DNA of 64,000 nucleotides from Lytechinus pictus. Lineage: Eukaryota. The stretch lies in assembly GCF_037042905.1 (NCBI RefSeq), contig NC_087248.1, positions 6,882,001 to 6,946,000 on the forward strand, written 5' to 3'. Under the pieces are notes generated by a model that ran no database searches, was not told the origin of the DNA, and saw nothing but the letters and a program-made list of their open reading frames with translations. The position numbers were made by a program, and so were the translations under genes. Position 1 is the first letter of the stretch; each line of letters starts with the position of its first letter. This document shows, in pieces, positions 1-55,500 of the stretch.

Positions 1-1760
1 AATGTGGTACGTGTTTCAGTTTCTTGTTTCCAGGAAAAAATGTCGAGGGAATAATTATGAACATGTGGTTAATTCGCGTGAGGCAAAAAATAACCACAAG
101 ATGAAATGCCATATGTGCCATTTGTGTTTATAGAACGTGCAGAATGCCAGTCAGGAAGACAGTACTTAGATAGACAATGGAATCTTGGGAAAACATGGGA
201 TATTAACCTCTTTGATCTATTTGGACATTGTGAACATGTTATCCCATAACAATTTTCACTTTTTTGTTTGGTGGTTATAGTTCTGAAGTAACTTATTAGC
301 ATGTGACCCCAGGCCCTTATATGCACAAAACACACCCCCCCATCTCTCTCTCTCTGTTTCTATCAATCTATCTATCAATATGTCTGTCTTTGTGACTAAA
401 CTGAGTTTATGTGTGTTAGGGTATTTTTTCTTATTCTTTTTTAAAATACTTTTAGTGCAATTGATAAGAAATAAAGGTGACCTATTCTGGGAAATGCGAC
501 CTCCTGCATGCATGCTTACTTTTAATTTCTCTGCAGGCATCTGCGGGTATAACGTCAGCAAACCGACTGCATCGGTTCATTGACATGCCATGATGTCATG
601 CACGAACCGGATTTGATCTTGAATATAAACATGATCATAATTAAAAAGACTAATGATATACATGTACATTATCATCCCACAGAAGCAGGATTAGTTGCAT
701 GATTTTCATTATGCACTGGCGAGTGGCGACCAATTTAGCTTGTTTCTTTGTGATTTGGGCTGAAAATAATTATGATGAAAATCATAAATAAAAAAACAAA
801 ATCCCAACATGAAGTCATTGTGGTTATTGCCCCTTTCTTTCTTTCACTTAAATTAGCCTATTTCCTCCATATCGTGGGGACTTATTTTCATTTATGCTTG
901 CTTTTATCGCTTTAATTATTTTTCCATTTTTTTATGGCTCATTCATTATTTTGTTTATTTATTCTTTACATTTTATTTCATTCACTCATTCATATAGTTC
1001 ATTATTCCTGGACTTCGAAAGAAAGATAATGTCTGTTCCTGAAAGATGAACCATACCAATATTCTAAGCGAAAATATCGCTCTGTGCTTCATGATTCTGA
1101 GAATGAGATGAAGATAGGATTTGTAAACAGTAATTTATCTCTATGTATTTTCTAGCCACAGTGTATTTTTTTATTTCAAAGCGGCTGCGAATCTACTAAT
1201 CGTGGCGTAATGAATAGGGCGTGAAAAAACGTGGATACATGGGCGGAGAAGATGTGAGGGATGATCAGGGTCCCACTGAAAATTGCAATTTACAACGAGC
1301 TTGGTGATCGACTATCTCTGGGTGAATCGAACCATACCTTCATGGAATATCCCGCCTGACTAGGTCTAAGATGTCTCTTTTTGAAAGCATATCAAGAGAC
1401 AGCGATGTCTTCCATTAGTTTTCCCGACCTATCGTTGCTTCATTGTGTAACGTGTCTTGTCAGATGGTAGATCGATCGGTTGGGTTGCAACAAGACAAGA
1501 TATGCAGGTGGTATAGCACCGGTTCGCCGAGTTTCGCTCATGCGGAGTGGGGGCGCCTCGAGGGCGGGGGCGGCAGGGATATAAATAGAAGAGTGTGACT
1601 TAGAATGGGGCTCTGCATGATATATAGCTTTGTTTTACTGCGGAATCTTGCTGAAATCAGGGAGGACACCACACCTCCCTGGACGTAACATGCAGACCTA
1701 CATGTATGGATCTGTAGCCATGCCAGCTGAATTCGGGTTGGCAGAAATTCTGGAGTGGTA

Positions 1761-1940
1761 TAGTCTGCAGGCACAGACCCTGATTGAAAATTTGATCAAC
1801 AAGTGTGTCTCCACGCACAGACTAGCCCATACAAAACTTGTTGTTTCAATTTGGGCCTTCAGTACACAAGTCATGAATAGGCTGCACATTCGGTGCACAT
1901 TCGGACCCTTAACTCGAGTGAAGGGTTTCACTGCAGACTA
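1761..1940. mobile_element. Short TAGTCTGC-ended MITE; second, inverted copy at 26465..26637
   Basis: TAGTCTGCAG...CTGCAGACTA termini; colinear with the reverse complement of 26465..26637. Confidence 0.65.
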
Positions 1941-4417
1941 CAGGAGCTCCCCATAAATATTAAATCCTGAACTTCTTTTTCCCCATCTACGGTACATGTA
2001 GCTGTCAAATCCATTGTTATGTTTGTCATTGAGAATGGTATACCTGTTCGAGTGAACCTTTATGGATTCCCCCAAACTTCCGAATCGCCCCCCCCCCCCA
2101 TCTCCCAACTGCCTCGTCCGCCCCCCCAGCCGTTACCCCCTCCCCCCAGTCTGGCTAACGAGGCGCCCTGATTCAGATTGGCAAAGGAAATAGGCTTATG
2201 CCTAAATGTCAATGAGAAGAGGGGCAGATGGACCGGAGACAGAGATGGAGAGATGTATACAGAAAAGGGAGAAAATGTCTGGGAAGAAGGTCAAATTATC
2301 ACAGAACAGGTTTCTGTATGTGGCATGATGGCTGATGAATCATTATTGAGAATAAAATTGAACAAAATGTTTAAAAAAAATGTTCGTGAAGGAAATGATA
2401 TCTATAGTTGTGAGGGTAACCCGTATAACCTAGAGAATTTATATTTTGTACGTTCTTATTTTGGCAATTGCACTTAAAATGATTGCTAGTTGCTACATCA
2501 TACATGGCGGTGTTATTTCATAATATTTGCCATGTTTGCGTAAATTAATAAAATTCAATTGATGCTGTTCCGTATGGATGATTTTGTGGTGATGATGATG
2601 ATGGTGATGATGAATGATGATGATGATGGTGGTGATGATGATGACGATGACATTGGTGGTGGTAATGATGGGGGTGATGATGGTTGTGCCTGTGTGGTTG
2701 TGATGACGAAAGTTATGGTAATGCATGGGAAGATGTCTTCAATATTTTAATGTTCAGTGACGGCACTCAATAATCTGATAATTATAGTCATTATTTTGAA
2801 GGAATTGAGATAACAACTGTCAATTAAAATCATGATAATGAATGATGTTACATTCTGCTATGCAACAAGCACGCGAGATCGAGGCCGTCCCGTTACACCA
2901 CTTGATGTGTTTAGATAGATATTTCAATCATGTGCCATATCCTGATCTCGTCTCGGGTGTCAAGTGTCCTCTCCTTATTATGATAACATCTGTAGATAAA
3001 GGTTAATAGGGATATGTAGATCATGATGGGTAAATTAATCTCGTCGGTCGCATGATATTCCCCAGCTAATAAAAGTTAGTCTTTGTGCAGAAACCTTAAC
3101 AAGTAACACCAGTGTAGCAAAAGTCGTTGTGAAGAAGCTTCTGTATCGAGTCGGGAGAAGGCTAGGGGTATTATATGGGAACGAGCCAGAATTGACTATT
3201 TATTTCTTCAATCGTTACCTTTTCATAACGAGTCTGCAAATACACACCACTGTCGACAACTATGATTTTCTGTTAGGATCAAGAACAGGATCGTGTATAC
3301 TGTATAGTAACATTGTCCAACAGTTTATCCCTGTTCTCAAGTAGAAACCAGAAGATACCTACCTGCCTACATCTACATGTAGGTTGAAGGTCTATTTAAT
3401 TTAGCCATGGTCCTACTACTCTGACATGATTCAGCCATGCTCCGAGTCTAACCACCCTTACTTGGCGAATCGGACAGCTTTTCAATATACTTCATATTAA
3501 AATTCATGATCTCCCACTTTTGATTCGACTATTATCATATCCTGTTTTGACTCTTCTTTTTTATCGTTTGGTTGTTATGTTTTATTAATTTCCTTTTCCA
3601 ATTTCTTGTCTGTTTGATTCTTTCTTATTTAGCGAGAGGACACTCCTTGTAGCTTTAAAAAGTCATATTACTGTAGTTACTGTTTGAGGTAAAATCATTA
3701 TAAACCCTTTGTGAAACAAAGTGGAGTCTGTACCAGGCTACCAGCATTTGTAACATTGCCCCGGCCCGCCCTTCTCTCTCAAGGTCATTCATTTAACCCA
3801 GGTGTGATATAATCCCTTACACAATATATTAAAGGTCAATAAGAATGATTATTTGTAAGCTAATTTTGTTTAACTTCATGATATTGAGTATTGGAATAGG
3901 TATTGTGTTATATTGATTTAGCAAATCAACAATGCCTGGATTTGATATTCTAGCTGAATAAATTATTGATGAAACAGGAAATAAGCTGACATAATCTCAC
4001 CTGCACTTGGCAGAACTGAGTTTTCCTTACTAGTATAATTATGATAAGCAAGGAACGCATTTACAGTGCTTATTGAGTGGTGACGACTGACGAATTTTAT
4101 CAACATAAATCCCGTAATGTGATGTACGAGAATTGGCCAGACTACAACATGTCAGTTTGGCATTTCAAATTAAACCCACGAGATCACGTGACACGTGTTT
4201 ACCTGCATGGTGAAATTTTGTTATTCTGGAAATAACAAGGGTCTGGAAATCTTGAAAATGTATTGAATAAGATGCATTGTTTGGATGATAATGATTTTGA
4301 CACCTCTTCTCTCTCGCCCACATTCTTCCCCCCCCCCCCCCATACGCCCTCTTGTTCTCTCTCCCATCTCTCCCTTAGGTGCATTGTGTCACGTGATTTC
4401 TATAGTCCCCATCCAAA

Positions 4418-48402: not shown

Positions 48403-49511
48403 AAAGATCATCTTGCAATGGCACTCCTACAAATCAACAGAATGAAGCGATAAAACGCTATAACAGGATGAAAATGAAAGTTAATTACTAAATGATTGTT
48501 ATATCCTGTAAATTGAATAACATGAATTTCCTTGATTCCTTAACACCTTTTTAAAGTAAAGCATGGTGATGTGCCCTAGGGCTGTGCCTCCTCATATCTG
48601 GTTCTAATCAAATGGCAGACACAAGGGACCCTATTCTGAAGTTGTGGACTGTAAACCCTCTACAGAGACAGATTTTAAATGAAAATCTCAGTACTTTAAT
48701 CATTAAAAGGCTTTTGAAATCATTAACTTCATAATTGACTTAACAGCCTTCAAGTCCAACCAACCACCCCCCCCCAAATGTATCTATTATAATACATGAA
48801 TTATTTTGTTCCTGCATGTTCATAGCCTGCACAGCCAACTTAAAATTGAATGCAAGTTAATCAAGAGTGAAAAATAAGCAAGTAAAGTGATTCAATCGCA
48901 AATTCTTCAATTTTCTATGGCTCATTTATTAGTCATGAAAACAGAGAAGAGAAAGAGAATATTATGAATGTGTGTTGTGATATGTACGGCGGAACATGGA
49001 TTGCCAATAAGGATCATAACCCCTCCCACAATTGGTGCTAATATTTGATTGCCATTGTGTGAAAGCAGAGGTCCCGATTCCTGAAAAAGAGATGGCAAGG
49101 AAATGTATGCACGTACAGTGAAGAGGGTAACAAAATAGCCAGTATCGGGGGAAACTAATGTACCTTACTACAGCTTAATATGTGTAAAGTGTATATATTT
49201 CACCCTATCATGGGAAAAAGAGCATTTGAGGCATTGTTTATGGCAGAGGAAATTTGACAAGTTTTTTTCTCAGGTTTTCTGATGTCAAAAAGTGATTACT
49301 TGCTTAGAGTCTACTTTATATATACAATTATTATAAAATAACTGACTGATTTACAACCTTGATCTCATTCTAGATGGTCTAATACTATTTTCTCTACAAC
49401 CATATGATAAAAAAAACTTTTGGTCTAATTGTCACTTAGTGTATTTACCATTTTGTTTAATTTCGATGTAGGCTATTCCCATTTTGTCTCATACACTTAG
49501 TCTAACATTAT

Positions 49512-50024
49512 ACAAATAGCGAATAGGCATGAGTGCGATGGTGCGAGATTTCGCATGAGGTGAAAGAAAGATGCTCTATTCAACGAGGCGTTAGCCGAGT
49601 TGAATAGAGTGTTTCTTTCTTTCACCGAATGCGAAATCTTGCACCATTGCACGAATAAGCATATTCGCTATTTGTGTTGTACAATGCCTCGGAGTTTAGC
49701 GAAAATATGAAAAAAAGAAGAGTTTTTTCCATGCAGTAATCTATGAATAGGGAGCAAAAATATTGAAAGCAAAATCCCACAAGCGCACATGATCTTGGGC
49801 AGCACTGCGCATTCAGCCAGCAGGCTTATACGCGCATTGCACCTTCATTTTTACTGAGCGAAATGAATTAAATCGTATTGTGACGTCATCTCCTAAAGCC
49901 GTGCAACGGTACATTTTGGACGGTACATTTTGGATGGTACGTCTTTTGTGCAACGGTACGAATGTTTGACATTCAGCCTCCCATTTGCTCGCGTACAACA
50001 AGCTAAGTAGGCGTTGTACAACAC
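49512..50024. mobile_element. Non-autonomous element with split inverted repeats (possibly Crypton/tyrosine-recombinase mobilised)
   Basis: 49512..49675 folds as a long imperfect hairpin. 49674..49689 is the inverted complement of 50009..50024. No conventional TIR pair or TSD is visible. Confidence 0.6.
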
Positions 50025-52524
50025 TATAGGCTTTATGATTATATAAACTGTTTATGGACCATTTTTTACCTTTTTCTTTTGACAAGCTAAAACACAATAA
50101 GTAGAGTGGAAATTATACCAACTGGGCACTAGACTAAATGTCAATTAGACTAAGTGGGTACTGGACTACCTGTAGTGAAGACCCATGTGATCAAATTGAT
50201 AATAGACCAAATGCATTTAGCCTAGTGGTGTTAGACTAACTGATAAAGTAGATCTTCTGCTAGTAGACCAAGTGCCTACAAACAGTACATGATCCTGTTG
50301 CATAAAAGTTTGCCATTATGGTAACTTTACCATCCAATTGCAACTATCATGGAATCCTTGATTCTGATTGGCTGTTGAGCCATGTTACCATGGTAGTTAC
50401 CATTGGATGGCAAAGTTACCAAAATAGTAACTTTTATGCGTTGGGCCCCAGGTTGGTTTGTCTCATATCAAGTTTGGCTAACTCCATTGAGTGCTTTGGT
50501 TAATTCATATTTTGGCTAAGAAATTGCTTGTAGACGGAGATAGGTGGAAAGCTCTTGCAAGTTCCACAGGAGTGAGTATGGGCACAATGTGACGAAAAAG
50601 AGAGAGAGAGTAAAACTGAACTGAAAATAAACCATTCCCTGGCAGACACAATGAATACAGAAATGTACATGATATCCTCAAATGGACAAGCAGCTCAATT
50701 TATTTTCTAAATTTTCAACTTGAACATTTTAAATTTCCATTTGTCTACGGACTTCAGGTTTGTAAAGGATGGTACTATAAAACGGTTCTATGTTGAAGCA
50801 TGGAGTGATTAAGATCACAAATATTATTTTACAAATGAAATGGTATACTAGGCAATAAAAATATCACAGACTTTGACCTTCTTGCCATATGATTATGAAA
50901 TCATCTGAATAGTTGGTGTAAAAATAGGTTTTCATATCTGCCAACCCAGGAAACCAAGAAATAGGACAAATTACTAATAATTTCCAGAAATAAGAGGTAT
51001 CTTCAACTTCCCATTCAAGGTTACATAAATTTGTTCAGAGATAGAAACACAGGAGTTAAAATGGAAATTTTCCTTTCTTCAAAATAATAAGAAAACTAAT
51101 TGGCAGGTTAGACAAATTCAGAAAAATAATTTATCCATGTAACTTCACCTATGAGCTTTTGGGATTTGAAGCGTATGACACTTGTCAACAAACCGCTGCA
51201 TGGGATGTGTGTCTTCCCATGTCTAAATGCAAACCTTAATCATTTCACGTCTGAACATGGCTTAAAAAGTCCTTCAGTTTTCATCAAAATTAAGTAAAAT
51301 AACAAAAGACACAAGTAACTTTACAGAATATTTACACGGACATCCAAAGCCGCTATGAATACATAACATAATAACATGTACATGTACAACATAATAGGCC
51401 TTGAAGCAATTACTAAAATTCTACAAGAGATGAAAAATAACAAAACACAAACCATTAAACTGCCGTAAGTCCCCACCCCCTCCCCCCCAAAAAAAAAAAA
51501 AATCTCAGAAATCTACTACATGATTACAAAGATTTATCAGCACCAGGCATGGTCAGAACCAACTGTCTGTAATGTAATCCCCAACAATGTATCATCAAAT
51601 TGTCCATCTACATTAACATTCCTTCATTCTGCCAATTACTGCAATTAGACATGCATGAATAATTTTTTTTTAGATGACTAAATAGTAAATACAGCTTCCC
51701 GGAGCTTGCTATTGGTCTTAATACTCATTCCAGTATCCTCATCGAATTCGCTTGAAAATTTTTCAACATCAAAATTAATTTCTAGTAAGATTTATTCTTC
51801 ATTTTTAATTTTTCAACCTATTCATTGGACTATCTTTATCGAATTTTGCAGGAAATAAATAAAAGAAAAAATTATCAATCATAATGAATTTTAATCATTA
51901 CTGCCACAGCATGCCAAAGTTGTTTGTTTAATCCCATGTACTACTGAAAGTATATTGGATATTGGCACATTTTTCGCTGATAAATACCAATTTATCAATC
52001 ATATTCAAGGATTTCAGTAGCTTGTAACAGTTATCAAAGAAAGGGAGGGGGGGCACTTGTGTTAAAAAAATCTGACTAGTAAAAAAAAAGAGACCCTCAC
52101 TCCCAAATGAAGGTAAAGGGGACTTATCTTATGTTACAAAACATATTGATAAGCAAAAAAAAGTCTTTGTGTATGCTTTTCCGCTACAAATATTTCATTG
52201 GCTCTAAAGAGGGGGGGGGGGGTTTAGATATGCCCTCATCCTCCCCCCTCCTGGGTATGCTACTGACAACTCATTCGACCATCAATTTATTCCTGGTTTC
52301 ACCAGTGACAGAACATTAAAATTGATGACCTTATAGAACTTAACTTTTGCATTCCACCACAAGTCTGATGTAAGATGACTGTGCAGTAGAGCAATAAGAT
52401 GATAAAAAATAACCTCTTACATCAATTTGGTATGTTAAAAGGAAAATTGTTACCAATATTGAGGAAGGTACAGGGGGAGTCAGGAGCTGGTTTGAACTGA
52501 GCTATATCATATTCATTTGGTCTG

Positions 52525-55500
52525 TTAATGCGTTTCTTGTTCCATCGACGACCCCTGTCCTTCGACCGCTTCGTCTCCTTCACCATCGACCTCCTTCTGT
52601 CGTTCAAGCTCAGCAGTCCGCTCTGCCTCCTCCTCTTCCTCCTTCATCTTCTGCTGCCAGCCTGCCTGGACCTCCTGGATCATGCCGTAGCGAAGGAGCA
52701 TCTTCTCGATCTGCTCATCAGGGAGCTTGGTGGCGGAGTACCAGACGGGACTGTCTGGGATGCAGGCATGCTCCGGAAGTAGGTAGAAGATCTCATTCCG
52801 CATCTTGATGCTCTCAGGGCTACAGGAGAAAGACAAATGAAAATATCAATAATGATTGAATAAAGAACACATCTTCCTTATAAAGGAGAACATATCGTTC
52901 ACAATCTAAGAAATCATCACTCTAAAAACACTATAGTCAGAAAAAAACAATTCCTTTCATGAAACGCTCCCCAGAGGAATTTGTCGGCCATTTTACCAGA
53001 CAGTTACCATAGTAACAGTGCTTATGAGCCAATTAGAATCAAGGAAAGCTGTCAGATCTGACAACTTGTCGGACAAAAAGACTAAGTGTTGATAAAATGT
53101 TGGACCCCATTGCATAAAAGCTACAATTCAGGTAGCTGTGTCATCCAATCATAAATACTGTGGAAACGCTGTTCAACACCCAATCAAAACCAAGGATTCC
53201 CAGGAAGGTACCACTCCATGGCAAAGCTACCAAAATTAATATATGTTGTGTAATTGGGCTGAAATAAAATGCCTCCATTCAATTAAGTATGTACATCCGA
53301 ACCCCTATACATGAAACCTCCCAGAAATGATTTGTCTCTGTTTTATAGAACTTCTTAAATCTCTCATATTATATATCTTGGCTTGAGCAGTCCGTGAAGT
53401 TGTTATAAAGGAGAAACACAAAGCTTAGTAATCATCATTAGGTTTTTTTTCTAATTAATAATAGCTGGATTAATAAAGCGCTTTTTACCAGAGGATACAA
53501 AGCGCTGCTATTATTACCCGGCTTTAGCTCGAGCTACCATCACAGGCGCTCAGCGCATGCAAGGAATTACTCCTGCCGGGTACCCATTCACCTCACCTGG
53601 GTCGAGTGCAGCACAGTGTGAATAAATTTCTTGCTAAAGGAAAATACGCCATGGCTACGATTCGAACCCACGACCCTCTGTTTCAAAGGCGAGAGTCAGA
53701 ACCACTAGACCATGACGCACCCTGATTGATTGTGCTGACTACGATGTACAATTAATCGTGAAATTCAAGAGTACGATTAATCGCTAACCTTTGTGTTACG
53801 GGACCCTGGGCAATCTTCTTCTTCTGTTTGTATTAATTCTTTTCTTTTGAATGATTTGAATGTGCAATAAAATGGTGAAGTTCTAAAAAAATGTTGATCA
53901 CATTATGGAAGCCAAGTGAGCCAAAAAGATGAATATTCTTACCATTTCGAGAGGTAGAATTCATAGAGCTTGACGGGGCAACGCAGCTGGTTCTCTATGT
54001 TTTCACTCTGATCGAGGGTCTCTGGATCATACTCTCGTTTCTTCCCTCTTCCAATGTTCAGCAGCCCAGTCTTTCCTGCTTCAGCAGCATCTGTAAGGAA
54101 AGGGAAAAACATCCATGTCGTTGTGTAATAAGTCAACAACATTCACACATTTCATGTCTTCCTGAAAATAATATTCAAAGCGAAACTCCAATTGTGGGAA
54201 ACATCAGCTTCAATAATCATAATAAATAACTAGAAATGCTCTGCGGGTCGCGCGGCTGAGCACATGTATCCTCCGAACCCACCGCATCATCCATCATTGC
54301 GATATATAGAGCTCACATGGAAATTTGACAAATAAATACAATTATCATGGCAACAATGACCCCACATTTTGCCTCTGGGTACCAAATTTGATGACAATAA
54401 TATGATGCAGCAGCGTGACTCTGCAGAACCTAAAGTATTCTCAAATAGCACCTGTTGGGGAATACAATTAAAGGGTAATAATAATAGTTATTTGTATAGC
54501 TCCATCTATCTAGAAACAATTTAGTCTGAGGCACATTTCTATCATTATTACCCAAGTATTATCTTGAGCTGCTTTCAAGCACTCAGTGCATTCAATGAAT
54601 TAATCCTACTGGGTATCCATTCACAATGTGGGTAAATTTCTTGCTGAAGGAAAACACGCCATGGATAAGGCTCGAACCTACATCCTTCTGATTGAAAGAC
54701 AAGAGTCGTAACCACTAGATCACAATGCCCCACAAAGTTTCATACCATTTCAATAAATGGAAAGAATAATATTGAAAAGGATGGATTTAAAAGATTGACT
54801 TTTAAATTACTTCAGCAGCATCTTATTATAAGGAAGGGAACAACAAAGTGACAAAGTGGAAAAGATGGAAAGAATTGTGAGTTTCCACACAATTCTAATG
54901 TAATTTAGAAAGAATTGTGGGTTTTCAAACCATTTGAATATAATTCAGAGAGAATTTTAGCAAAATAAGTCATTTACTTTATTTTCGATTGCCCTGTTTT
55001 ATGATATGCAACACCCCACAAAGCACAAGACTCACCGTTCTTCTTCTTGGGAGGAAAGTAGCGGAGAAGGGAGACCTTCCCACTGGGAGTGTTGGCCTTC
55101 TTCACCAACTTCTGCATGCGAAAGAAAGCTAGCTTGGAATGCTCCTCCACGTTCCTCATCCTCAGGTTCCGACAGTTGAAGAAAAAGATGGTGCTGAGCA
55201 GAACGTGGGGTGAGTGCGCCCCCAACTGCTGGGACGCCCACATCATCTCCTCGTTGATGCGGGAGTTGAGGAGCAGACCGGTGGTGGGGTGCAAGTTGGG
55301 CACCCAAGGGCTAAGCGCATTGTGGAGGCAAATCCGGAAGTGCTCATAGCTGGGGCCGGCCAGGAAGTTGTCCAGGCGGCCGTTGTCGGTGAGGTGTCTC
55401 TGGATGGAAAGGCACATCAGGAGGATGGTTTCTGGAGAATACGATTCGCCGTCGGGTCGCCGGGCGTCGCGGACAAACTGGATCAAAGCGCGATGGATGA

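What the first reader, a model, noticed from the sequence alone, without database searches (positions are those of the whole stretch)
49512..50024. Element whose joined ends recreate the complement of an internal site (split inverted repeat), next to a Crypton-derived gene
Seen: right end AGGCGTTGTACAAC(AC) joined to left end ACAAATAGCGAATA gives AGGCGTTGTACAACACAAATAGCGAATA. This is the reverse complement (1 mismatch) of internal 49662..49689, TATTCGCTATTTGTGTTGTACAATGCCT. The element therefore reads as a circle carrying one inverted repeat that was opened within one arm, with at most an AC overlap and no TSD. The 165-nt left hairpin is capped by CGAGGC-GTTA-GCCGAG (49584..49599), with tandem G.A mismatches and a GNNA loop, typical of stable ssDNA hairpins. 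Known: TSD-less integration of circles is tyrosine-recombinase chemistry (Crypton; DIRS with its internal complementary region; folded ssDNA substrates in integron attC and CTXphi). The ZMYM DUF3504 domain derives from a Crypton recombinase. Inference: a non-autonomous recombinase-mobilised element using a folded substrate. Its position 2.5 kb from the ZMYM stop codon may be coincidence.
Basis: partly seen in the sequence, partly recalled or inferred. Interest (0 to 1): 0.7.

Follow-up and report, generated by a model that had tools for sequence, protein, structure and literature searches.

The report
Hairpin-ended non-autonomous Crypton transposon
This is one of roughly two thousand copies of a small non-coding jumping element in the sea urchin Lytechinus pictus; it belongs with the Crypton (tyrosine-recombinase) transposons and shows an end structure, a long hairpin plus an internal inverted copy of the joined ends, that its protein-coding relatives share across echinoderms and bivalves and probably a coral, and that the papers I could search do not describe.

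Summary
Window 49512-50024 is a ~510-bp repeat with 421 exact left ends and 471 exact right ends in the genome. It has a 164-nt hairpin, and next to the hairpin sits an internal site that is the inverted copy of the joined ends.

Copies refine the ends. The unit runs 49509-50021. TAT on the left is invariant (72-76 of 76). The right end stops at ...ACAA. The window's extra CAC is not a family feature. There are no TIRs and no symmetric TSD. The target (A-Y-A-N^T-A...A-A-T) resembles the element's own junction.

By luck, one fetched locus (L097) holds a 2.4-kb element with the same left-end motif, the same hairpin apex and the same split inverted repeat. It encodes an intact 475-aa Crypton-type tyrosine recombinase. 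The same layout occurs around related recombinase genes in eight more species: three other sea urchins, a starfish, a brittle star, a scallop, an oyster and, more weakly, an octocoral. The arm sequences differ between lineages while staying complementary, and the G·A-mismatched apex is invariant in seven of ten hairpins.

The folded-DNA step is plausible but untested. The ZMYM neighbour is coincidence. The master copy of this family was not found. The scan had not noted this element before.

The parts
49509..49511 (+). TAT: the constant trinucleotide at the left boundary. It is the likely crossover core carried by the element.
   Evidence: T 72/76, A 76/76, T 75/76 in aligned copies. TAT also flanks the outer hairpin end in all nine protein-coding relatives except the octocoral (TTA) and L. 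variegatus (ATG).
49512..49675 (+). 164-nt imperfect hairpin (left-end module). It starts ACAAAT and ends ATTTGT.
   Evidence: Inverted-repeat pairs I2, I4, I6. DNA fold -66.7 kcal/mol. Hairpins of 105-184 nt lie 130-530 nt downstream of the recombinase ORF in every relative examined.
49584..49599 (+). Hairpin apex: a 6-bp stem with two tandem G.A mismatches, closed by a 4-nt loop.
   Evidence: The motif CGAGGC-loop-GCCGAG is invariant in 7 lineages while the stem just below it covaries. The loops are GTTA, GCA, GATA, GAA, TTTA. The octocoral has a close variant with a GAA loop.
49662..49689 (+). Internal site: the inverted copy of the joined ends. It consists of the last 14 nt of the hairpin, one spacer base (49676), and 13 nt complementary to the right end.
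   Evidence: Every relative has the same arrangement with its own letters. The spacer is always one base (C or A in junction sense), against TAT in the junction.
49690..49992 (+). Non-coding interior. It includes a TGACGTCA palindrome at 49881-49888 and no ORF.
   Evidence: It has no similarity to the coding relatives beyond the end motifs.
49901..49959 (+). Four subterminal GGTAC motifs. Two of them (breaks after 49909 and after 49956) act as secondary recombination sites.
   Evidence: Direct repeats D5, D6. Copies in L003, L015 and L097 are broken exactly there and joined to TAT-ACAAAT of another element. Partial right ends in L097 start at such motifs.
49993..50019 (+). Small 3' hairpin: a 7-bp stem (49993-49999 with 50013-50019) and a 13-nt loop, overlapping the right arm.
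   Evidence: Read. Its function was not tested.
50009..50021 (+). Right-end arm, ending in the palindrome TTGTACAA. It is complementary to 49677-49689.
   Evidence: Pair I5. All copies end at ...ACAA. The exact 23-mer has 471 hits.
50022..50024 (+). CAC: not part of the family unit. It is either target DNA or an event-specific addition.
   Evidence: 4 of 76 copies carry CAC. Others carry C, CA or nothing before the flank. The +1 base is not linked to any internal variant (best p = 0.06 over 96 columns).

Best explanation
The element is a non-autonomous, MITE-like derivative of a Crypton (CryptonA-type) DNA transposon of Lytechinus pictus. It has no gene of its own and is moved in trans by a Crypton tyrosine recombinase.

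Shown:
- The unit runs from TAT (49509) to ...ACAA (50021).
- It has no terminal inverted repeats and no symmetric target duplication.
- It lands in sites that look like its own joined ends (A-Y-A-N ^ T-A-N-N-N-A-A-T).
- After insertion the left boundary always reads TAT, while the right flank keeps the target's own T-A-like bases. This is the pattern reported for an active Crypton in Chlamydomonas.
- Protein-coding elements with the same architecture encode only a recombinase with the full R..K..HxxR..H..Y catalytic set.

Inferred:
- The element leaves and enters through a circle whose junction ACAA-TAT-ACAAAT is the recombination site.
- The recombinase cuts and rejoins at or beside TAT.
- The long hairpin and the adjacent internal site act in cis. 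In a single strand or an extruded cruciform, the internal site pairs with both ends at once. That lays the two ends side by side on one continuous stem, with TAT as the only bulge, so that one recombinase assembly can join them.
- Head-to-tail dimers, a tail-to-tail dimer and deletions at internal GGTAC motifs are by-products of the same site-specific recombination.
For: Family and ends.

Flank logo over 76 copies, with p between 1e-5 and 1e-39 per position.

Asymmetry of the boundaries: left TAT 95-100%, right T 71% and A 75%. The +1 base is not inherited with any subfamily. Copies are only about 3% from their consensus, so decay cannot explain the asymmetry.

Coding relative in the same genome (L097 503-2892):
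- left end TAT-ACAAAT;
- 167-nt hairpin 506-672;
- internal arm 673-687 complementary to the right end 2880-2892;
- 475-aa ORF 2732..1305 hitting DUF3504 (5e-13), Phage_integrase (2.5e-6) and QRICH1;
- right boundary fixed by a second copy at 99.5% identity.
This hairpin lies next to recombinase hits at five genomic places in the same relative orientation. Finding a recombinase in one of seven fetched 10-kb loci has a chance of about 0.4%.

Same layout, with different arm letters but complementary arms, in:
- S. purpuratus (35-nt arms), Diadema (11 nt);
- Patiria (37 nt, 95%), Pecten (22 nt, 95%);
- Magallana (21 nt, 90%), Amphiura (39 nt, 95%);
- weaker in L. variegatus and Dendronephthya
.

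Apex motif invariant while the stem below it covaries.

Catalytic residues invariant in 7 proteins.

The joined strand folds into one stem through the junction, with a 2-nt bulge.

The strand antisense to the ORF folds at least as well as its complement in 8 of 8 hairpins.

Literature: an active Crypton ends in CACCG and targets CAYCG, and causes inversions and translocations at such sites (PMC9977147).
Against: - No coding element with this family's own hairpin and right-arm sequence was found, so the recombinase that moves it is unidentified. The exact-end lists for contigs C1-C2 showed no 1.5-5 kb pair enclosing a recombinase.
- No empty site, no circle and no polymorphic insertion was seen.
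- The cases I first read as nested insertions (L003, L015) are better read as dimers with deletions, so they do not prove the exact break.
- A classical tyrosine recombinase with a 6-8 bp overlap should leave mixed cores on both sides. The clean left/right asymmetry is not explained in detail.
- The right half of the target logo is one base out of register with the element's left arm.
- Evidence for a single-stranded or cruciform substrate is indirect. The excess of G.T-type mismatches on the favoured strand is 16 against 8, which is not significant.
Confidence: 0.85

Rival explanations
1. Two ordinary cut-and-paste MITEs lie side by side: a 164-bp foldback and a 350-bp TIR element. They are moved by a TA-targeting DDE transposase of the Tc1/mariner type.
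For: Each half has its own inverted ends. TA is frequent on both sides of the unit.
Against: - The two halves travel as one unit in about 50 of 60 unselected copies, and neither half was seen alone with a TSD.
- The outer ends of the unit are not inverted repeats of each other.
- Left TA is 95-100% conserved but right TA only about 57/76, in copies about 3% from their consensus.
- In coding relatives the two 'halves' are separated by a recombinase gene, and no DDE gene is present.
Confidence: 0.03
2. A rolling-circle (Helitron/Helentron-like, HUH nuclease) non-autonomous element. A nick next to a hairpin, a single-strand circle, and read-through would account for the tandem copies.
For: - No TSD, no TIRs, a constant flank on one side only, a ragged 3' end and a small 3' hairpin.
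- Head-to-tail dimers: 8 exact junctions.
- The genome holds at least 35 Helitron Rep matches.
Against: - The ends are not 5'-TC/3'-CTRR, and insertion is not at A^T or T^T (end rules from PMC8969392).
- Every coding element that shares the architecture encodes only a tyrosine recombinase.
- Dimers are about 2% of copies. They are expected from a recombinase whose best target is a resident copy's own boundary.
Confidence: 0.05
3. A non-autonomous DIRS-like retroelement. The internal site would be a true internal complementary region used during reverse transcription to rebuild the ends, and the recombinase would integrate the cDNA circle.
For: The layout, with an internal stretch complementary to the joined termini, is the defining oddity of DIRS elements as summarised in PMC13465315.
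Against: The coding relatives are 2.1-2.4 kb with a single ORF that has no RT, RNase H or methyltransferase domain. Their proteins match DUF3504, which DIRS and Ngaro recombinases do not match according to PMC3212892.
Confidence: 0.03
4. It is a Crypton derivative, but the hairpin and internal site are not recombination substrates. They would serve another purpose, such as a replication origin for the excised circle or a terminator/regulatory structure for the recombinase gene. Recombination would need only the TAT core and the arms next to it in ordinary duplex DNA.
For: - In coding elements the hairpin sits downstream of the ORF, where a terminator or origin could lie.
- Crypton copy number rises despite excision, which suggests replication (PMC9977147).
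- Apex loops of the GAA type are known from my own knowledge to occur at phage single-strand origins.
Against: - The non-coding family keeps the hairpin although it has no gene to regulate.
- The internal arm is complementary to the far end of the element in every lineage, and the break falls exactly at the one bulge of the combined stem. A terminator or origin gives no reason for either feature.
Confidence: 0.25

Closest known systems
CryptonA elements and their non-autonomous derivatives (Crypton-1_SP; CryptonA-1_OL with CryptonA-1N1/N2_OL; Kojima and Jurka 2011, PMC3212892)
   Same: - A single ORF for a tyrosine recombinase that matches DUF3504.
- No TIRs, no RT.
- Non-autonomous copies far outnumber coding ones.
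- The same animal groups, sea urchin included.
   Different: That paper states that no terminal repeats of any kind were found in animal Cryptons. Here a 105-184-nt hairpin, an internal inverted copy of the joined ends and a TAT core define the ends. This family has about 2000 copies, whereas Cryptons are described as generally low in copy number (PMC8969392).
CryptonF-1_cRei, the active Crypton of Chlamydomonas (PMC9977147)
   Same: - One terminus carries a fixed short motif and the target carries a near-identical, slightly variable one.
- There is no true duplication.
- Recombination at copies and at target-like sites produces rearrangements.
   Different: It belongs to a different Crypton group, and its motif is 5 bp (CACCG/CAYCG) against TAT/T-A here. 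No hairpin or internal complementary site is reported for it. Activity there was observed directly; here it is only inferred from copies.
DIRS1-type retrotransposons (inverted terminal repeats plus internal complementary region)
   Same: An internal stretch is complementary to the two termini laid end to end, and a tyrosine recombinase is the integrating enzyme.
   Different: DIRS elements encode RT, RNase H and often a methyltransferase, and are 4-6 kb. Their ICR is thought to work on cDNA. The elements here are DNA-only, and the complementary site abuts a long hairpin.
Folded single-strand substrates of bacterial tyrosine recombinases (integron attC, CTX-phi attP)
   Same: As a working analogy: a recombination site made by intrastrand pairing, with unpaired bases at the crossover that mark the strand.
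   Different: This is an analogy recalled from general knowledge and was not tested. There is no sequence or protein kinship beyond the recombinase fold, and single-strandedness is not shown here.
Helitron / Helentron non-autonomous elements
   Same: No TSD, hairpins near the ends, one-sided flank conservation, tandem copies.
   Different: Different terminal rules and target. The coding partners here have no Rep/helicase gene.

Membership tests
Crypton (tyrosine-recombinase DNA transposon), as a non-autonomous derivative | Mobilised by a Crypton recombinase with the R-H-R-Y catalytic set; coding relatives encode only that protein | tested here: met
   The window copy has no ORF. Elements with the same architecture encode a 440-475-aa protein hitting DUF3504 and Phage_integrase. 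R184/R186, K217, H306xxR309, H332 and Y341 are invariant in 7 species. There are weak matches to XerC-like and XerA structures in the catalytic part.
Crypton (tyrosine-recombinase DNA transposon), as a non-autonomous derivative | No terminal inverted repeats, no long terminal direct repeats, no reverse transcriptase | tested here: met
   The outer ends of the unit are unrelated in inverted orientation. The coding relative is a single ORF of 2.4 kb.
Crypton (tyrosine-recombinase DNA transposon), as a non-autonomous derivative | A short direct repeat at the termini that is similar in all copies and reflects homology with the target, not a duplication | tested here: met
   Left TAT in 72-76 of 76 copies. 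On the right, T-A in 54 and 57 of 76. The target logo resembles the junction.
Crypton (tyrosine-recombinase DNA transposon), as a non-autonomous derivative | Termini shared with a coding Crypton of the same genome | tested here: inconclusive
   It shares the core AA-TAT-ACAAAT, the apex motif, the architecture and the insertion site with the L097 Crypton. The arm and stem sequences differ, and BLAST finds no other similarity. The true master was not found.
Crypton (tyrosine-recombinase DNA transposon), as a non-autonomous derivative | Excision as a circle and reintegration by site-specific recombination | not testable with these tools
The junction sequence also exists in 8 genomic dimers, so reads alone would not prove circles.
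Tc1/mariner-type MITE | Terminal inverted repeats and a TA duplication equal on both sides | tested here: not met
   No TIRs between the unit's ends. Left TA 95-100% against right TA about 71-75% per base.
Helitron / Helentron | 5'-TC and 3'-CTRR ends with insertion at A^T, or 5'-T with insertion before T and short asymmetric TIRs; Rep/helicase partner | tested here: not met
   The ends are TAT-ACAAAT and ...TTGTACAA, and the left flank base before TAT is A/G/T. The partners encode a recombinase.
DIRS-like retrotransposon | RT/RNase H (and methyltransferase) genes with ITRs and an ICR | tested here: not met
   An ICR-like site is present, but no RT domain is found in the coding relatives.

The most novel reading that the evidence does not exclude
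The long hairpin and the internal inverted copy of the joined ends are the working recombination substrate of animal Cryptons. One strand, the one antisense to the recombinase gene and marked by the conserved G.A-mismatched apex, folds so that the internal site splints the two ends into one stem with TAT bulged out. The recombinase then acts on that folded DNA. This would be a eukaryotic counterpart of attC/CTX-phi recombination. It would also be a DNA-only forerunner of the DIRS terminal-repeat/ICR design, old enough to be shared by cnidarians, molluscs and echinoderms.
Probability: 0.3. Interest if true: 0.85.

Novelty: new variant of a known kind. Interest (0 to 1): 0.7.

Why it matters
Cryptons are the least understood class of eukaryotic DNA transposons. 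Reviews say their only structural mark is a few repeated bases at the ends, and that animal Cryptons have no terminal structure at all. That is why they are usually recognised only by their protein, and why their non-coding derivatives go unclassified.

The layout found here has four parts:
- a TAT core;
- a hairpin that starts ACA and ends TGT;
- a conserved apex;
- an internal arm complementary to the far end.

It gives three things. First, it is a sequence signature by which Crypton ends and Crypton-derived MITEs can be annotated. Second, it gives a concrete, mutable set of cis elements for the first biochemical test of animal Crypton transposition. Third, it is a structural bridge to DIRS retroelements, whose internal complementary region has had no counterpart among DNA transposons.

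It also shows that a Crypton lineage can reach MITE-like copy numbers (about 2000) in an animal genome.

Tried and rejected
(1) TA target-site duplication. Rejected because of the left/right asymmetry in young copies and the lack of subfamily linkage.

(2) Helitron/HUH reading, which I rated about 35%. Dropped once the coding relatives proved to be recombinase-only.

(3) L091, a 2.07-kb unit with this family's ends, looked like a longer relative. Its interior is an unrelated abundant tandem-repeat element inserted into a copy.

(4) L003 and L015 as clean nested insertions giving an empty site. On re-reading, the sequence after the inner copy is not the host's continuation, so they are dimers with deletions at internal GGTAC motifs.

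(5) The stretch L097 3030-3111 as the right end of the coding element. It is unique DNA. The true right end is at 2892.

(6) Search for this family's master, in three ways: pairing exact left-end and right-end hits 0.6-8 kb apart on C1-C2, proximity to 91 recombinase matches, and BLAST of the unit against eight Crypton loci. None gave a master.

(8) Strand bias of G.T-type mismatches: 16 against 8, not significant.

(9) Gigantopelta locus L116: the gene model has introns and the layout is unclear, so it was left out.

I recomputed the table from the stored files.

Full report
THE OBSERVATION.
A 164-nt imperfect hairpin (49512-49675) is followed by a 350-nt stretch whose first and last 16 nt are inverted repeats (49674-49689 and 50009-50024). 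Joining the right end to the left end with an AC overlap gives the reverse complement of 49662-49689 with one mismatch. The unit folds as DNA at -117 kcal/mol, z = -12.7. The apex at 49584-49599 has two G.A mismatches and a 4-nt loop.

IT IS A REPEAT FAMILY.
- The genome is Lytechinus pictus.
- It holds 421 exact copies of the left-end 26-mer and 471 of the right-end 23-mer, and at least 1811 candidate matches.
- The best 40 matches are all full length.
- In an unselected sample of 60 left ends, about 50 are full units. The rest are internal deletions that keep both ends (for example L067 and L072), truncations, or copies with insertions.
- Copies are a median 3.1% from their majority consensus. 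The window copy is 3.0% from it.

TRUE ENDS AND TARGET.
Aligning 76 copies with their flanks shows the following.
- The three bases before 49512 are TAT in 72-76 of 76 copies.
- Every copy ends at ...ACAA (50021).
- The next bases are T (54/76) or C (19/76), then A (57/76).
- Further positions are biased: -7 A, -6 C/T, -5 A, +6 A, +7 A, +8 T, each with p from 1e-5 to 1e-18.
- The target therefore looks like the element's own junction: ACAA, then TAT, then ACAAAT.
- The base at +1 is not linked to any internal variant (best p = 0.06 over 96 columns), so it comes from the target.
- The window's CAC (50022-50024) is one of only four such cases.
- A simple TA duplication is excluded, because the left TA is nearly invariant and the right TA is not, in copies too young to have decayed.
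- One fixed terminal motif and one target version is what was reported for an active Crypton of Chlamydomonas, which ends in CACCG and targets CAYCG (PMC9977147).

BY-PRODUCTS.
- Eight exact head-to-tail junctions exist in the genome, about 2% of ends.
- L071 is a tail-to-tail pair sharing the 8-bp palindrome at the right end.
- L003, L015 and L097 show copies broken at internal GGTAC motifs (after 49909 or 49956) and joined to the TAT end of another element.
- L097 also has two partial right ends that start at such motifs.
All of these are what a site-specific recombinase acting on its own site and on look-alike sites would leave.

THE CODING RELATIVE.
I fetched L097 because its copy stops at unit position 400. 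It contains, from 503, the following:
- TAT-ACAAAT and a 167-nt hairpin (506-672), with almost the same apex as the window copy;
- an arm (673-687);
- 21-bp tandem repeats;
- a 475-aa ORF on the other strand (2732..1305);
- a right end at 2892, followed by TA.

The ORF hits DUF3504 (5e-13), Phage_integrase (2.5e-6) and QRICH1. A second copy (L108) is 99.5% identical over 1.9 kb and fixes the right boundary.

The right end of this element is complementary to the arm next to its hairpin. Its joined ends are therefore the inverse of its internal site, apart from TAT against one base. That is the window's architecture in different letters.

This hairpin lies beside recombinase matches at five places in the genome, in the same relative orientation. 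A 94%-identical hairpin family has at least 35 further copies, from 217 candidates. The chance of meeting a recombinase gene in seven fetched 10-kb loci is about 0.4%. The element entered a family copy at the same GGTAC site at which family copies are joined to each other, which points to the same target specificity.

OTHER SPECIES.
Homologues of the protein led to loci in other animals. In each, a hairpin lies 130-530 nt downstream of the ORF. It starts ACA and ends TGT, and is followed by ATA on the coding strand in seven of the nine; the octocoral has TTA and L. variegatus ATG. The stretch just before the hairpin is complementary to the 5' end of the element:
- S. purpuratus: 35 nt
- Diadema: 11 nt
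- Patiria: 37 nt, 95%
- Pecten: 22 nt, 95%
- Magallana: 21 nt, 90%
- Amphiura: 39 nt, 95%
- L. variegatus: weaker, with an indel
- the octocoral Dendronephthya: 13 AT-rich nt

The arms differ between lineages but stay complementary. One example is a C:G to T:A switch between Diadema and L. pictus. The spacer in the internal site is always a single base.

The apex CGAGGC-loop-GCCGAG is invariant in seven hairpins while the stem below it covaries. The coral has a near variant.

The proteins keep R..K..HxxR..H..Y.

HOW IT LIKELY WORKS.
Shown: the ends, the target preference, the asymmetric core, the rearrangement products, and the link to recombinase-only elements.

Inferred: movement through a circle whose junction is the recombination site.

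The role of the hairpin and internal site is the open step. In a joined single strand the stem runs without a break from the right arm through the junction into the hairpin, with only two bases of TAT bulged. So the break point is the one irregularity in a stem of about 95 bp. In the integrated state the same internal site can pair with both ends at once and bring them together.

Three observations fit a folded strand: the conserved G.A apex, loops of a kind stable in single-stranded DNA, and the fact that the strand antisense to the ORF folds at least as well as its complement in 8 of 8 hairpins (the lineages are not fully independent). They do not prove it. The G.T-type mismatch bias (16 against 8) is not significant. 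I put the Crypton assignment at 0.85 and the folded-substrate step at about 0.3-0.4.

WHAT IS KNOWN.
- Kojima and Jurka state that no terminal repeats were found in animal Cryptons, and report the first non-autonomous Cryptons (PMC3212892).
- A 2022 curation guide gives a few-bp terminal repeat as the only mark of Cryptons and calls them low in copy number (PMC8969392).
- A 2026 paper on DUF3504 Cryptons says some families lack any repeat description (PMC13465315).
- Three full-text searches found no paper on a Crypton hairpin or internal complementary site. Repbase entries could not be checked.

The element is therefore a new member of the Cryptons. The architecture is a new structural variant for that class, resembling the DIRS internal complementary region in a DNA-only element.

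LIMITS.
- The master copy of this family is not identified.
- No empty site or circle was seen.
- The ZMYM-like DUF3504 exons at window 52690-55264 are an unrelated neighbour.

Noticed in passing
window 49420-49464 and 50109-50153 (also 49494-49507 / 50229-50242): The element sits inside another repeat. Its flanks are 45-nt inverted repeats (78%) rich in TAGACTAAGTG-like motifs, so the insertion is nested in a foldback-type element. Copies of that host repeat without the insertion would give a true empty site.
   Followed up: no
L091 462-2065 (G000:C1:6506325-6507928): An abundant element of about 1.6 kb (1864 candidate matches) is built around internal tandem repeats of about 155 bp. Here it is inserted into a copy of the family. 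Its copies elsewhere lack this family's ends.
   Followed up: partly
L097 730-900; L110 7585-7733: Between the recombinase ORF and the hairpin, the L. pictus Crypton has eight 21-bp tandem repeats. The Diadema Crypton has inverted and tandem copies of a related motif (core GGACGCATG). These may be accessory binding sites conserved between distant sea urchins.
   Followed up: no
L109 5809-5848, L111 4737-4776, L117 3480-3520: The long 5' arms of the sea urchin, starfish and brittle star Cryptons share a conserved stretch ending in a CCAAT-box-like ATTGG just upstream of the ORF. Its complement is kept before the hairpin. So the arm may double as a promoter element.
   Followed up: no
G000 contigs C10, C12, C11, C14 and others: At least 23 Helitron Rep-domain matches lie in uninterrupted frames of 2200-3500 aa, several clustered on C12 (7.85-8.28 Mb) and C10 (0.04-0.40 Mb). 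These are apparently intact giant Helitron proteins in L. pictus.
   Followed up: no
G000: At least 50 loci match the Crypton recombinase. They fall into several identity classes (100/99%, about 54%, about 50%, 44-47%) with intact frames of 447-497 aa, so several Crypton families may still be active in this genome.
   Followed up: partly
L097 2895-3030 and 3302-3338: Inverted (TAG)n / (CTA)n microsatellites bracket a segment holding unique DNA and two partial right ends of the family. This suggests an inversion next to the Crypton insertion.
   Followed up: no
L108 4925-5117: A perfect 17-nt inverted repeat pair, with a third copy 160 nt away, is embedded in GATA-rich simple sequence beside the second Crypton copy. 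It is probably a small MITE.
   Followed up: no
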